In this document: positions 953-20,474 of the stretch, one piece after another | How positions within the stretch are numbered: the first letter of the stretch is position 1 | How the letters are laid out: every line of letters starts with the position of its first letter | DNA from: Orbicella franksi | Lineage: Eukaryota | Assembly: GCA_964199315.1 (NCBI GenBank) | Contig: OZ116702.1 | Span: 10,540,001 to 10,604,000, forward strand | Reading direction: 5' to 3' | DNA: 64,000 bases | Program-made: the position numbers and the translations under genes | The notes under the pieces: model-generated | What the model saw: the letters and a program-made list of their open reading frames with translations, nothing else | The model's database searches: none | What the model was told of the DNA's origin: nothing

Positions 953-3900
953 GTATCTGTTGAACAACATGATAGCATTTCTCTCGAAAGATAGTTTTGC
1001 CTACTCATTAAATCTTCGTCAATTGTAGGTATAATATAGTGCTAGCTTAGAACAGAACAGTTAATTAAGGACTGGTTTAAAAGAAATGCACTTTATCAGC
1101 TGTTTTCTGTAAATCCTGTAAAATATGGAAACAAAATCGAAATGCAAGTCAAACTCGTGGATTGTTTTTAGCAAACGCATCCATCGCAATAGACCGTTTC
1201 CGGCGGATATATTAAAATGTAGCTCGGCAGTGAGGCTCCGAGGAAACAAACAAAGGAAATTGAATGAACATGTTTCTGATTCATTTCTTGTGTTTGTGTC
1301 CTCTAGGTTTCACCATCAAGCTGAATTTTGATGTATCAAAAATGGCCCATTGGGACGCTAGTTCTGTTTCTTTCCCTAGTCACATCCCGTACTATTCTGA
1401 ATTTTTTTATTTACCTATATTTCAAATCAGTTGTTTGTCTATTTGAATTTATTTGTTCTTGTATTTTGGTGTCGAATTCGATAAACTAAACTAAACTAAA
1501 AAATTCCTGACGAAATAAACCAGCAGCTCGCTTCTTATTGATCATTAGCAATGGATTTGGAACGGCTGATGTTTAATACAGGTTGCACGTGCGGCGGGCT
1601 GTAAAACCATCCTGTTTAAAAGTTAAAATTACATTTGACTTCTTAGATGACATATTTAAGACAAAACTAGAACAAAATGATATTTTCTGATATTTGATAT
1701 CTTAACTGAAATCATCCGACAGGTATTTGGCATCCAACAATATTCAGAAATTACCCGACGAATTATTTTCAAACCTGGCACACTTACAAAGACTGTAAGT
1801 CTATAAGCATAATCATTAACAAACAAGTAATAAAAGCTTATAGATTAAAGGAGCTCAGTCACGGTTTGCGCATATTGAAAAGTTTAGCCTCAATCATCAG
1901 TTTTCAAATTCGTCGTTTGTAATCGGTGTTAATCTTCTCCATCCTTAGCCATCCTTGTTCCTCTATGGTTTATCATTATCTCTTTGGTGTTTTTCTATCT
2001 TATTAAACTGTTATTTTCAGGTTTTCTACCATTTAAAGGTAATTTTGTATGTGGCCAAAATAGCTCAAAATATCGTGACTGAGCTCTTTTAAGATATACT
2101 TTAAATATAGCATCTTTTCGCCAGTAGTTTACACTAAAAGCTATACTGTTTATGGCAGGCTGTTTGTTTTTGACATGCTTGTGGACATCATATTGAATGG
2201 CTTTGGTCACCTTTATCAATAGTTTTCACCGCGAAGAAACGATAAAAACCCGCACCTCCTTTTTTGTGTCAATAAAGTTCCGGGTTATTTGTTTATGATA
2301 CCTGTGTGTGCGGGACGCATCCACAAAGCAAGAAATGTGAAAAACAAGGCTGAGATCTTTGAAATCGAATCAGACAATTTTGCCTCGACGCCCTATGAGG
2401 AATAAATTAATAGCTCTAAAAGTCGGTAGTGCCCTATTCAAGGAGCCCATTAACCTGCCTATTCTAAATTGTCTCACCCTTATGCATCCCAAAGATCACA
2501 ACGGTGTTGTAACTTGAATCCTCGCTAACTTGAATCAAAATCGATTTCCCCTGGATCTCTATCATACATTTATTGTAATTTTACCCTTGTTAACTGGAAC
2601 TTCCGGCTCACTAGAAGCGATATCTGTTTCCCTTCAGGTCATTTTACACGAATGTTATCCTCGATAACTGAAACCGTGTTTGCCAATACGGAAAAACTTG
2701 AAATAATCAGTGCCGCTGTCGAAAAAATAAATTGCTTGAACTTTGCCGCAGTAACCCGACGTAGTTCTCTTTCAGAAACCTGCAAAGGTCGTAGTACCTG
2801 GACTTCTCCTGCTGCTTTGATTTGTTTTCTTTTGTTTCTTATTTCGTTTGTACGTTCTGATTTATGCTGTGATTTAGAACTGTATTATTCAATTCTCAGC
2901 AGACTTCTCCCTAATTAAATCTGGTTAAAATTTACACTGTATGAATAGAAATGCAGAGAACACCCTTTAATTCGTTAACTCGAAAATTTTTCAATTTCTC
3001 TTGAACGTTCAAGTTATCGAGAGTTGATTGTATTTTCATTTAATTGTAAATAAAAAGTCATTTACTTCGCAGAGATCTGTCTTCCAATAAAATCCAACAA
3101 TTACAGAAGCATTTATTTTACGGTCTGAAGGAATTGAAAATGCTGTAAGTTATGTAAAAATACACTCTTTTATAGATAAAACGCACCTACTCTAAGCGCC
3201 CGCCTACTTAGTGCCCCAGTCGTAAGAAAAGCATTCGTTAAACGTTTTCAGTCTTAAGTTGCGGTTTTAGTGGGTTCCTATGGAATTCGCCTTGTTAATG
3301 AGTTTTTGTTATCATGGATGCTCTGACTTTCCCTGACTTTGTCCAAATGAGGATATAATGGTAAGCTCAAAATGAACCAATTTTTTTGTTTGTTTTGTTT
3401 ATTTCGTCCTCCTCTCCATTGCCACTACCACTCTTTTCTTTTCCATTTCCACGGCGGGAATGCACTTTCAACCCATCGACCTCTAGTTAAACACATCACA
3501 ACTTTATTTTCCCCTCGTGTCACATTGTTTACTATTGTCATCTTTTCTCTATTTCTAGAAACTTGCGAGAAAACAAGATATCCTCTATATCAAACGAAAC
3601 CTTTCCGGTCTCCAGCAGTGGGTTTCAACTGTGCGTATCATTTTTGCAAAATCTTTCAAATATTTTCTTTATTCATCTCTCTGTAACAGCTTTAATAAAA
3701 GCTTTATTGAAGTGTCATTGTATTTAGTATTAACTACTAATTGGGGAGACAACAAAAGAAAGTTAAAATTCTTTACAATTAAATAAGTAAAAAAAAGAAG
3801 AAGTGTATATACAATCAATCTGCAAAAATCTATGTATAAGTAGTACATGGAAACAGTAGGCATATTATAAGTAGTGTTTAAGATTAAAAGTTACGACAAT

Positions 3901-18900: not shown

Positions 18901-20474
18901 TGTACTAGAAAACAAAGGGGGTGCTTACATAATAGAAGCACTTATTATATTAGAGCGCTTTGAAAAAAGATACTAGAGAGGGTTATAAGAAAAGGGGTTT
19001 CTCACTGAACCATTACGGTATATATAAATACTTTTCTTTTAATCTGACGGTGTTTCGATGTAAGAGACGAATAAAGATGATGTTAGGTGAAGTAACATGT
19101 AATCTGAAAGGGATAAGTTTTGCTGGGCAGGTTACATCATTTTTGTTTTTCTTTTGGCTTTCATAGTTATTGGTGTTAACTGTGTCACGCAACTGATTCT
19201 TACTTTTAGTGAAGTGAGTTAACGAGTCGATCCAATAAACTTATGCGTTTAACGCATTATGCCGTCAAATTCCAAGATAATAAGACAAACCTGGCGAAGT
19301 TTTGTTGTTGCTGTTGTTGGTTGTGTTGTTTTGTTTTGTTACTTGACTCGTATTTACTAACGGTTACCGTTGAATGTTGATGGTCTAATCTTTCCAGCTT
19401 ATTTGAGCAATGTCAAGCGTTTCACGTATACCTTTAGTGTCAAGAAATGAATCAAAATTTATTTAGCCATAATTCATTAAGTCCACTGGTTACTGATTTA
19501 AAGAAAGACGAAGAAAGATCGTTATTAGGTATTTAATTTATTCTTTTCGATTTTTATCTCGTTTATAACAGATATTTGATACGGACGAAGCTTAAAACAG
19601 TGAGCCTGGAGTCCTTCATGGGATTCCGTGGTTTAGATTTACGAATGTAATGTATCCTATAATGAGCCATATATTAATGTATATAGATAGTAAATTTAGG
19701 CCGAATACTAAGAAATACCCCCACAAACCCCTCCCCACCCTTTCTTAATGGGGCCTCAGTCTTATTCAGACAACTATAATAGGTGATTAAGACAGATGAC
19801 CTTACTTGGAGTCTTCCCGAAACGCTAGAGAGTAGGCTTCGCTGTCCCTTTTAGAGCATCAAAGCTATCACAAGGAACCTTGGAGGATTTACAGCACGTC
19901 CAAAGATATTTCTGTTGAGTCTAACATTAGGAGATGACATTGTATCACGAACGAATAAAGTCATTATTTATTTTTATTTTATTTTTTTATTTATTTATTC
20001 CTCCAATTCCTTATTCCTCCAATTCCTTATTTATTCATTATTTACAGTCAAAATATCATATCCTCTATCTTGGTTTTCAACGATATTTATTACACGTAAC
20101 AAAATGACAAAAAGTGGTTACAAGCTGGTGAAAACTAATGAAGGACACGAAAACTATCATTACAAGAGTTTAAAGTTAATGCGGGAATCACTCTCCTCCC
20201 CTCTTCACCCTATGGATCTGAATAGGATAAAGCATACTTCTAAAAACTGAATCAAGAGTTGAAGTTAGCTATCCACGAAGCATCTTTTCACAGGACATTA
20301 TGTTTCCTAGCTATATATATAAGGTATGAAGTGTATTTATAGTCAAGCTTTGAATTTACAAATCATCTTTAGGCTTCTCTTAAAATCTACGTTTTGCTTT
20401 AGGGCGATAACGAACAGATCCATTGGGAAGCTTGAGTATCACACAAACGGCACAGCTCGCGGTACAATATATCT
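953..20474 (+). CDS. Array of 25 single-LRR coding exons (19 x 72 nt, 4 x 69 nt, 1 x 75 nt, 1 x 99 nt)
   Basis: Each exon is 1 nt + n codons + 2 nt, has a pyrimidine tract ending in AG and a GTRNGT-like donor (one GCAAGT), and matches the LRR consensus. The last 2-3 repeats are degenerate. Most are too short to appear in the ORF track. Confidence 0.9.

What the first reader, a model, noticed from the sequence alone, without database searches (positions are those of the whole stretch)
953..20474. 25 interchangeable one-LRR-per-exon cassettes: a frame-proof combinatorial ectodomain
Seen: every LRR exon is a multiple of 3 nt, both flanking introns are phase 2, and every exon ends in CT/TT/AT/GT. 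The split codon is therefore always NTN. From the genetic code, NTN is always Leu/Ile/Val/Met/Phe and never a stop. Any skipping, duplication or loss of exons keeps the frame and keeps a hydrophobic residue at a conserved LxxLxL position. Inference: this could be a diversifiable recognition receptor (immune, symbiont or allorecognition), analogous to the exon-shuffled LRR arrays of brown-algal ROCO genes. One-exon-per-LRR layouts also occur in ordinary LRR genes, so variability has to be demonstrated.
Basis: partly seen in the sequence, partly recalled or inferred. Interest (0 to 1): 0.75.

Follow-up and report, generated by a model that had tools for sequence, protein, structure and literature searches.

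The report
Coral receptor gene, one-LRR-per-exon array
This is the in-window part of one coral gene whose very long leucine-rich-repeat ectodomain is built from 42 same-phase mini-exons, a layout known from other LRR genes that permits exon skipping, which has not been shown for this gene.

Summary
All 25 in-window exons (953-20474, + strand) have AG/GT(GC) borders, lengths that are multiples of 3, phase-2 introns on both sides and an NT end. One caveat: exon 17951 is taken as 99 nt; a 75-nt donor is also possible.

The array is cut by the window edge. 17 more cassettes, plus signal-peptide, Ig and LRRNT exons, lie up to 14 kb upstream. The 49 exons splice into one 1,931-aa ORF: signal peptide, Ig, LRRNT, 41 LRRs, a cap-like exon, Ephrin-like/DUF7630 Cys-rich repeats, then a roughly 9-TM module. 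That module resembles predicted models of Dictyostelium SadA and fungal FLC/Pkd2 proteins. The genome holds at least 60 copies of its exon.

Combinatorial splicing is not supported, and not excluded:
- The exons are old (mean 46% nucleotide identity).
- The introns share no selector-like elements, and donors are mostly consensus.
- The last repeats keep fixed positions across paralogues.
- 17 cassettes are all present in three other contigs.
- RNA reads gave no verdict.

The only positive splicing evidence comes from RefSeq isoforms of a Montipora homologue. They differ by one cassette, the counterpart of exon 19572-19646, which has the weakest donor here. LRR exon number varies from 0 to 41 among paralogues, so the diversity shown is evolutionary.

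The first-stage scan noted a similar array elsewhere in this genome.

The parts
953..1024 (+). LRR exon, 72 nt, phase 2-2 (cassette 18 of 42 in the full gene)
1723..1794 (+). LRR exon, 72 nt, phase 2-2
   Evidence: LRR_8 E=3e-4
3073..3144 (+). LRR exon, 72 nt, phase 2-2
3559..3630 (+). LRR exon, 72 nt, phase 2-2
4078..4149 (+). LRR exon, 72 nt, phase 2-2
4318..4389 (+). LRR exon, 72 nt, phase 2-2
5349..5420 (+). LRR exon, 72 nt, phase 2-2
5867..5938 (+). LRR exon, 72 nt, phase 2-2
6764..6832 (+). LRR exon, 69 nt, phase 2-2 (CC-type repeat)
7258..7329 (+). LRR exon, 72 nt, phase 2-2
8128..8199 (+). LRR exon, 72 nt, phase 2-2
8824..8895 (+). LRR exon, 72 nt, phase 2-2
9512..9580 (+). LRR exon, 69 nt, phase 2-2
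10968..11039 (+). LRR exon, 72 nt, phase 2-2
12317..12385 (+). LRR exon, 69 nt, phase 2-2
13156..13227 (+). LRR exon, 72 nt, phase 2-2
13869..13940 (+). LRR exon, 72 nt, phase 2-2
15656..15727 (+). LRR exon, 72 nt, phase 2-2 (CC-type)
16098..16166 (+). LRR exon, 69 nt, phase 2-2
17081..17152 (+). LRR exon, 72 nt, phase 2-2, followed by a GC-AG intron (GCAAGT donor) that is kept in contig L026
17530..17601 (+). LRR exon, 72 nt, phase 2-2
17951..18049 (+). LRR exon with extended tail, 99 nt (donor GTCAGT). An in-frame 75-nt alternative ends at 18025 (donor GTATTC). Homologues have 72-96 nt here.
18398..18469 (+). Last canonical LRR exon (MLTDNPIK type), 72 nt, conserved as the terminal repeat in paralogues
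19572..19646 (+). LRR-like exon, 75 nt, phase 2-2. The only donor without G at +5 (GTAATG). Its homologue is the cassette skipped in Montipora RefSeq isoform X2.
20373..20474 (+). Cap-like exon, 102 nt, phase 2-2; last symmetric cassette
20978..21192 (+). Linker plus first Ephrin_rec_like Cys-rich repeat; phase 2 to 1, so it cannot be skipped in frame
21582..21707 (+). Ephrin_rec_like/TNFR-like Cys-rich repeat exon, phase 1-1
22199..23755 (+). Large exon: Cys-rich repeats (DUF7630) and most of the roughly 9-TM module
24194..24603 (+). Last coding exon: end of the last TM helix, cytoplasmic tail, stop codon

Best explanation
The 25 exons are the 3' part of a 42-exon run of frame-neutral (phase 2-2) mini-exons in one 49-exon, about 38.6-kb gene. 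The gene runs from G000:C5:10526035 to 10564603 (window -13965 to 24603) and encodes a 1,931-aa type-I multi-pass surface protein. Its order is: signal peptide, Ig domain, LRRNT cap, 41 typical 23-25-residue LRRs, a cap-like exon, Ephrin-receptor-like/DUF7630 Cys-rich repeats, a roughly 9-helix membrane module of the SadA/FLC/Pkd2 'TRP-like' type, and a cytoplasmic tail. The one-LRR-per-exon, all-phase-2 layout is inherited from growth of the array by exon duplication. That is the same history inferred for glycoprotein-hormone receptors, Slit, brown-algal ROCOs and Tetrahymena LRR genes. In this family it lets LRR number change over evolutionary time: paralogues carry 0 to 41 LRR exons, and some show recent block duplications. 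In this particular gene the array is old and each exon is distinct. Most exons are probably spliced constitutively into one long ectodomain that binds an extracellular ligand or surface and couples to the membrane module (inferred). At most a few weak-site cassettes, first of all 19572-19646, are likely to be skipped. Shown here: exon anatomy, the single ORF, domain content, paralogue variation, and colinearity between individuals. Inferred: surface receptor or adhesion function, mostly constitutive splicing.
For: All 49 exons have canonical borders and give one uninterrupted 5,796-nt ORF. The Ig_2 domain scores above Pfam's cutoff. Single exons hit LRR_8, and the repeat consensus is xLxxNxIxxLpxxxFxxLxxLxx. 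The 3' exon order is confirmed by tblastn with Oculina homologues. Full-length homologues in Montipora, Nematostella, a jellyfish and sea cucumbers combine signal peptide, LRR_8, Ephrin_rec_like, DUF7630 and this TM module. The TM module model has pLDDT 87.5. It matches AlphaFold models of Dictyostelium LRR protein DDB_G0281931 (TM-score 0.65), SadA, yeast FLC1-3/YOR365C and S. pombe Pkd2. The genome holds 86 matching pieces, at least 60 of them full-length copies. Paralogues show the same 72-nt phase-2 exons in numbers from 0 to 15, and an Oculina paralogue has 23. The array is old: mean exon-exon nucleotide identity is 46%, the maximum is 71%, and there is no intron-intron similarity. Half of the donors are GTAAGT, 41 of 42 keep G at +5, and no other conserved intronic motif exists. 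The terminal four LRRs match the terminal repeats of paralogues in order. Three independent contigs are colinear with 17 cassettes, all with intact splice sites.
Against: There is no transcript evidence for this gene. Two polyA RNA-seq runs gave 0 reads on 6 kb; this is no test, because the organism's presence in those reads was not shown. Metatranscriptome contigs covered introns and exons alike, without joints. A public annotation of this locus calls only a 526-aa product from the large exon. RefSeq models of several Oculina paralogues start inside the last LRR exons, so inclusion of the full array in mRNA is inferred from ORF integrity and from full-length homologues. Differences between individuals are about 17 nonsynonymous to 3 synonymous, and exon divergence is not significantly below intron divergence (6/1281 vs 106/14379). 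Present-day constraint is therefore not shown. The signal-peptide exon was picked by pattern and by analogy with Oculina N-termini, not by evidence.
Confidence: 0.62

Rival explanations
1. One reading: the symmetric cassettes are used combinatorially. Regulated or stochastic skipping of many LRR exons would give a repertoire of ectodomains for immune, symbiont or allorecognition.
For: Any subset of the 42 exons keeps the frame and a hydrophobic junction residue. RefSeq isoforms X1/X2 of the Montipora capricornis and M. foliosa homologue differ by exactly one 25-aa cassette homologous to exon 19572-19646. A GenBank model of an Oculina paralogue omits 4 intact LRR exons present in the DNA. Brown-algal ROCO genes with the same exon design show multiple LRR splice variants (PMC11378527), and human NLRP3 skips an LRR exon (PMC6642158). 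The family is large, clustered and variable, like many recognition families.
Against: No isoform of this gene was seen (one search gave no verdict). The only documented skip in a homologue is a single cap-proximal cassette. Splice sites are mostly consensus, and there are no selector- or docking-like intronic elements. Terminal repeats have fixed positions across paralogues. The omitted Oculina exons may be a gene-prediction artefact.
Confidence: 0.13
2. The LRR array is not expressed with the 9-TM module. It would be a decaying or silent remnant, or a separate gene, and the functional product would be a short protein from the last few exons.
For: A public annotation gives only a 526-aa product. 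Several RefSeq models of Oculina paralogues start at a Met in the last LRR exons. No spliced RNA was found. The nonsynonymous-to-synonymous ratio among individuals is high.
Against: About 1,000 codons across the 42 cassettes stay open, with every AG/GT border intact, despite divergence to 46% identity between exons. Splice sites are intact in three other contigs. There is no terminal exon, TM segment or stop between the array and the Cys-rich exons. The 526-aa product lacks a signal peptide. Full-length RefSeq and other models with LRRs plus this module exist in Montipora, Nematostella, Sanderia and holothurians.
Confidence: 0.12
3. Somatic DNA-level cassette rearrangement, as in lamprey VLRs or as proposed for Ectocarpus, diversifies the array.
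For: Only the analogy of LRR cassettes in a colonial, long-lived animal (PMC3341825).
Against: The germline gene is complete, and every cassette has its own splice sites. No spare, antisense or intronic pseudo-cassettes were found. The order is colinear in four independent assemblies or contigs.
Confidence: 0.02

Closest known systems
Brown-algal (Ectocarpus, Saccharina) LRR-ROCO genes with shuffled LRR exons (PMC3341825, PMC11378527)
   Same: One LRR per 72-bp exon, all introns phase 2, LRR number varying between paralogues, and recent exon duplications in some family members.
   Different: Those are cytoplasmic ROC-COR GTPases; this is a secreted-pathway Ig-LRR ectodomain on a roughly 9-TM module. 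Ectocarpus has intact LRR exons on the non-coding strand and decayed exons in introns; none were found here. Splice variants are documented there and not for this gene.
Glycoprotein-hormone receptors and LGRs (LHR/FSHR/TSHR), and Slit genes
   Same: Ectodomain LRRs encoded by separate exons of about 72 bp, with all introns in phase 2. This is interpreted as growth by exon duplication (cited in PMC11378527; Slit modularity cited in PMC6642158).
   Different: Those have 7-18 LRRs, or four capped blocks in Slit, and end in a rhodopsin-type 7TM or no TM. Here there are 41 uninterrupted LRRs and a non-GPCR module.
Tetrahymena 90-bp-exon LRR genes (PMC6564038)
   Same: Long tandem arrays of equal-length LRR exons with more than 96% phase-2 introns and a junction codon shared between exons; expansion by exon duplication.
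   Different: The exons are 90 bp and the expansions are recent and clonal, with nucleotide-level similarity. The array here is old (maximum 71% identity).
Human NLRP3 and other NLR LRR exon modularity (PMC6642158)
   Same: Exon borders sit at the same place in each repeat, so exon skipping is frame-neutral. A single LRR exon is alternatively skipped.
   Different: Those are 171-bp exons of two RI-type LRRs in a cytosolic sensor, with experimentally shown splicing.
Dictyostelium SadA and LRR protein DDB_G0281931; fungal FLC1-3, YOR365C, Pkd2 (Pfam PF06011 'TRP')
   Same: The predicted fold of the multi-pass module. SadA also has Cys-rich EGF-like repeats before nine TM helices (PMC2173991). 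DDB_G0281931 also carries LRRs.
   Different: The similarity is model-to-model only. PF06011 does not hit this protein at E<=0.1, and no function has been tested in animals.

Membership tests
One-LRR-per-exon, phase-2 symmetric LRR exon arrays | Each exon encodes one repeat (about 72 nt) | tested here: met
   33 of 42 exons are 72 nt; the others are 69, 75, 99 or 102 nt.
One-LRR-per-exon, phase-2 symmetric LRR exon arrays | All flanking introns are in phase 2 and at the same repeat position | tested here: met
   42 of 42 exons are phase 2-2. The junction codon is L/I/M/V at the first Leu of LxxLxL.
One-LRR-per-exon, phase-2 symmetric LRR exon arrays | Repeat number varies between paralogues through exon gain and loss | tested here: met
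   0, 1, 2, 11, 13 and 15 LRR exons upstream of six paralogues, 41 here, 23 in an Oculina paralogue with recent block duplicates.
Ectocarpus-type dynamic exon shuffling | Spare intact cassettes on the opposite strand or decayed cassettes in introns; recent exon copies | tested here: not met
   No such cassettes were found in a PSSM scan of both strands or in a relaxed + strand scan for missed exons. Maximum exon-exon identity is 71% and introns are unrelated.
Alternatively spliced LRR cassette genes (NLRP3, ROCO) | Transcript isoforms differing by whole LRR exons | tested here: inconclusive
   No spliced reads for this gene. Montipora homologue isoforms differ by one cassette.
Dscam-type mutually exclusive exon clusters | Conserved docking or selector intronic sequences and near-identical alternative exons | tested here: not met
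   No information content in the 50 nt flanking each exon beyond the Py-tract/AG and donor consensus, and no intron-intron matches.
Typical LRR (Pfam LRR_8 clan) | LxxLxLxxNxL core with a 23-25-residue period | tested here: met
   N at repeat position 6 in 32 of 33 72-nt exons, and L/I/F at positions 3, 8, 11, 16 and 22. 8 of 10 single exons hit LRR_8.
SadA / FLC / Pkd2 TRP-like multi-pass proteins (PF06011) | Sequence match to PF06011 | tested here: not met
   No PF06011 hit for the large exon at E<=0.1. Only a sub-threshold hit (20.5 bits) in relative P0173.
SadA / FLC / Pkd2 TRP-like multi-pass proteins (PF06011) | Shared fold of the membrane module | tested here: met
   Foldseek against AFDB Swiss-Prot gives DDB_G0281931 (E=6e-12, TM-score 0.65), then SadA, YOR365C, FLC1-3 and Pkd2, all at probability 1.00. 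Both sides are predictions. There is no PDB match.
LGR-type LRR GPCR | Rhodopsin-like 7TM after the LRRs | tested here: not met
   No 7tm Pfam hit. The model has about 9 long helices. GPCR chains appear only as noise-level matches.
Lamprey VLR-type somatic assembly | Incomplete germline gene plus flanking cassettes without splice sites | tested here: not met
   The spliceable gene is complete, and the order is colinear in four independent sequences.

The most novel reading that the evidence does not exclude
This gene and its 60 or more paralogues could be a non-self or symbiont recognition repertoire, found so far in cnidarians and echinoderms. Ectodomain length would be tuned on two time scales: by exon duplication and loss between paralogues, and by skipping of symmetric LRR cassettes within a gene. 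Ligand binding would be read out by a SadA/TRP-like multi-pass module instead of TIR, kinase or GPCR signalling.
Probability: 0.12. Interest if true: 0.75.

Novelty: new member of a known kind. Interest (0 to 1): 0.38.

Why it matters
The frame-proof exon design is textbook for LRR genes, so it is not itself a discovery. The gene is still worth noting for three reasons:
- It has one of the longest uninterrupted LRR ectodomains (41 repeats).
- It is under-annotated in public data, where only a 526-aa product is called.
- It belongs to a large, clustered and essentially unstudied coral family that joins LRR, Ig, CUB, MAM or SRCR ectodomains to a SadA/TRP-like membrane module.

If long-read cDNA showed real cassette usage, corals would gain a candidate diversified surface receptor. 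If not, the locus remains a clean animal example of LRR growth by exon duplication, and a guide for re-annotating the family.

Tried and rejected
- **RNA reads.** Two polyA runs laid no reads, which is no verdict. Two metatranscriptome contig sets were unspliced and covered introns, probably DNA or pre-mRNA. Expression and skipping are therefore untested.
- **LGR-type GPCR.** This was my first guess from the 72-nt phase-2 exons. It was rejected by Pfam and fold searches.
- **PDB fold searches for the TM module.** Foldseek and VIA-align wide found nothing convincing.
- **Montipora DNA.** Look-ups of the locus, to check that the skipped 25 aa is one exon, found nothing on record.
- **Orthologue contigs L024 and L025** (87% and about 80% nucleotide identity) do not reach the LRR array, so no between-species dN/dS on the concave face was possible.
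- **An alternative haplotig in the assembly** was not found; only transposon fragments matched.
- **An early selection signal did not hold.** I first counted 0 substitutions in the LRR exons of L026. There is 1, in the 102-nt exon, and the pooled exon-versus-intron contrast is not significant.
- **Literature searches** for this family in cnidarians found nothing specific.
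Full report
**Where the window lies.** The window is G000:C5:10540001-10604000 of a 497-Mb scleractinian-type genome. The closest named proteins come from Oculina, Porites and Montipora.

**Observation.**
- Eighteen exons are 72 nt and four are 69 nt.
- Exon 17951 is 99 nt if the GTCAGT donor is used. A 75-nt in-frame alternative with donor GTATTC also exists. Homologues have 72-96 nt at this position.
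- Exon 19572 is 75 nt. Exon 20373-20474 is a 102-nt cap-like exon, not a canonical LRR.
- All 25 begin and end in phase 2 and end in NT.
- Over the whole array the split codons encode L x32, I x4, M x2 and V x2.

It follows from the intron sitting inside the codon of the first Leu of LxxLxL in a set of homologous repeats. The regularity is therefore inherited, not a series of independent coincidences.

**The array is longer than the window shows.** I fetched 20 kb upstream. It holds 17 more symmetric LRR exons: 15 of 72 nt at window -8719 to -293, one of 69 nt at -10784 and one of 75 nt at -12261. In front of them lie:
- an LRRNT-like Cys-cap exon (-12648..-12540, phase 1 to 2);
- an Ig exon (-13057..-12812, phase 1-1; Ig_2 at 31.6 bits);
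- a probable signal-peptide exon (-13965..-13905), chosen by hydrophobicity, donor phase and analogy with Oculina N-termini.

**The 3' end of the gene.** tblastn with Oculina homologues defines four more exons: 20978-21192, 21582-21707, 22199-23755 and 24194-24603.

**One ORF.** The 49 exons give a single uninterrupted 5,796-nt ORF of 1,931 aa. About 1,000 codons across the 42 cassettes have stayed open, with every splice border intact, although the exons have diverged to 46% mean nucleotide identity. That argues for long-term selection on the whole array.

**What the gene is.** The C-terminal part contains Ephrin_rec_like/TNFR-like and DUF7630 Cys-rich repeats, followed by about nine long helices.
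- The exon for this module has 942 relatives at E<=1e-3 in a word-indexed search and 3,594 cluster representatives in an exhaustive search.
- This genome has 86 matching pieces, about 60 of them full length, largely in tandem clusters. The nearest is only 69% identical.
- Full-length relatives in Montipora, Nematostella, a jellyfish and sea cucumbers join a signal peptide, sometimes CUB, MAM, SRCR or Ig, then LRR_8 repeats, Ephrin_rec_like and DUF7630 to this module.
- An AlphaFold model built on a 40-sequence alignment is confident (pLDDT 87.5, pTM 0.85). It has no convincing PDB counterpart.
- The model matches AlphaFold models of Dictyostelium LRR protein DDB_G0281931 (TM-score 0.65), the adhesion receptor SadA, yeast FLC1-3/YOR365C and S. 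pombe Pkd2. SadA is described as a nine-TM adhesion receptor with EGF-like repeats (PMC2173991).
- Sequence membership in Pfam PF06011 is not met.

I read the product as a surface receptor or adhesion protein with a giant LRR ectodomain on a SadA/TRP-like module. That function is inferred.

**Is the ectodomain combinatorial? Evidence for permissiveness.** The design allows any subset of cassettes. Paralogues show the same 72-nt phase-2 exons in very different numbers: 0, 1, 2, 11, 13 and 15 in six paralogues here, and 23 in an Oculina paralogue. Some paralogues have recent duplicates of single exons or multi-exon blocks. So exon gain and loss has diversified the family over evolutionary time, as in brown-algal ROCOs (PMC3341825, PMC11378527) and Tetrahymena (PMC6564038).

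**Evidence against free interchange in this gene.**
- Exon-exon nucleotide identity averages 46% (maximum 71%), and the introns share nothing except transposon fragments.
- No spare, antisense or intronic pseudo-cassettes were found.
- The 50 nt on either side of the exons carry no conserved element beyond the Py-tract/AG and the donor. 21 of 42 donors are GTAAGT and 41 of 42 keep G at +5.
- The last four LRRs match the last repeats of paralogues in the same order. Exons 12-18 form a run of one subtype, so repeats have positional identity.

**Variation between individuals.** Three independent contigs were compared with the window: L026 (ENA) and L028 and L029 (JGI). They are 98.6-98.8% identical to it.
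- They are colinear with window 15087-25859, -506..6719 and 294..5953.
- They contain all 17 cassettes that they span, with intact splice sites.
- Substitutions in symmetric exons (6/1281) are not significantly rarer than in non-exon sequence (106/14379).
- Coding differences are about 17 nonsynonymous to 3 synonymous. That is too few to call selection either way.

- Two polyA libraries gave no reads. This is no test, because the organism's presence in the sampled reads is unverified.
- Two metatranscriptome contig sets lay unspliced over introns and exons, with no joints.
- A public annotation of this locus calls only a 526-aa product of the large exon.

The only positive splicing evidence is indirect. 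RefSeq isoforms X1 and X2 of the homologue in Montipora capricornis, and again in M. foliosa, differ by exactly one 25-aa segment (YMIRANLTQFDVESFDNSKEITPIL). It lies between the MLSDNPI-type repeat and the cap-like exon, so it is the counterpart of exon 19572-19646. In this gene that exon is the only one whose donor lacks G at +5 (GTAATG). I therefore predict limited skipping of this cassette, perhaps alternative donor use at exon 17951, and no combinatorial repertoire.

**Comparison with known systems.**
- The exon design matches brown-algal ROCOs (72 bp, phase 2), gonadotropin receptors and LGRs, and Slit. It is analogous to Tetrahymena (90 bp) and to NLRs (171 bp), where LRR exon modularity is explicitly called a precondition for alternative splicing (PMC11378527, PMC6564038, PMC6642158).
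- It differs from Ectocarpus in lacking spare cassettes.
- It differs from Dscam in lacking selector elements.
- It differs from VLRs in being a complete, spliceable germline gene.

**Verdict.** Combinatorial use remains undemonstrated and, on present evidence, unlikely. The layout is a new member of a known kind. The gene family itself is poorly known and deserves re-annotation and a long-read cDNA test.

Noticed in passing
window 32097-34042 (- strand) and about 48883-48969 (- strand): Two tandem copies of a glutamate-carboxypeptidase-II / transferrin-receptor-like gene (Peptidase_M28 plus TFR_dimer). The same peptide TIKLCNFGGEEFGLIGSVEWMEENSLIF occurs at 33001-33087 and at 48883-48969.
   Followed up: no
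window 161-496, 635-825, 3695-3953, 7525-7910: Intronic and upstream repeats with dozens of copies at 72-92% identity across the chromosomes (SINE/TE fragments). They account for most of the long introns.
   Followed up: partly
window 20978-24603 compared with L026: Between two near-identical haplotypes or individuals, the non-LRR coding part (plus one change in the 102-nt cap exon) differs at 12 nonsynonymous sites and 1 synonymous site. This may be relaxed or diversifying selection in the Cys-rich/TM part, or chance.
   Followed up: partly
window 17153-17154: A GC-AG intron (donor GCAAGT) follows LRR exon 17081-17152 and is conserved in contig L026.
   Followed up: partly
window 22243-23847: The public protein for this locus (526 aa, in the same 90% cluster as P0001) covers only the large exon. 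The gene is under-annotated by about 1,400 residues. Several Oculina models are likewise truncated, or fused to the next tandem gene (P0006 and P0280 carry the neighbour's signal peptide and Ig).
   Followed up: partly
G000:C8:20.9-23.4 Mb, C4:11.0-13.0 Mb, C10:10.3-13.1 Mb, C7:31.4-31.9 Mb, C1:4.2-4.6 Mb: Tandem clusters of paralogous 9-TM exons. Some C8 copies score identically, which suggests very recent segmental duplicates.
   Followed up: no
window about 59700-59900 (- strand): A reverse-transcriptase-like ORF fragment (…RGVRQGCPLS…), probably a LINE.
   Followed up: no
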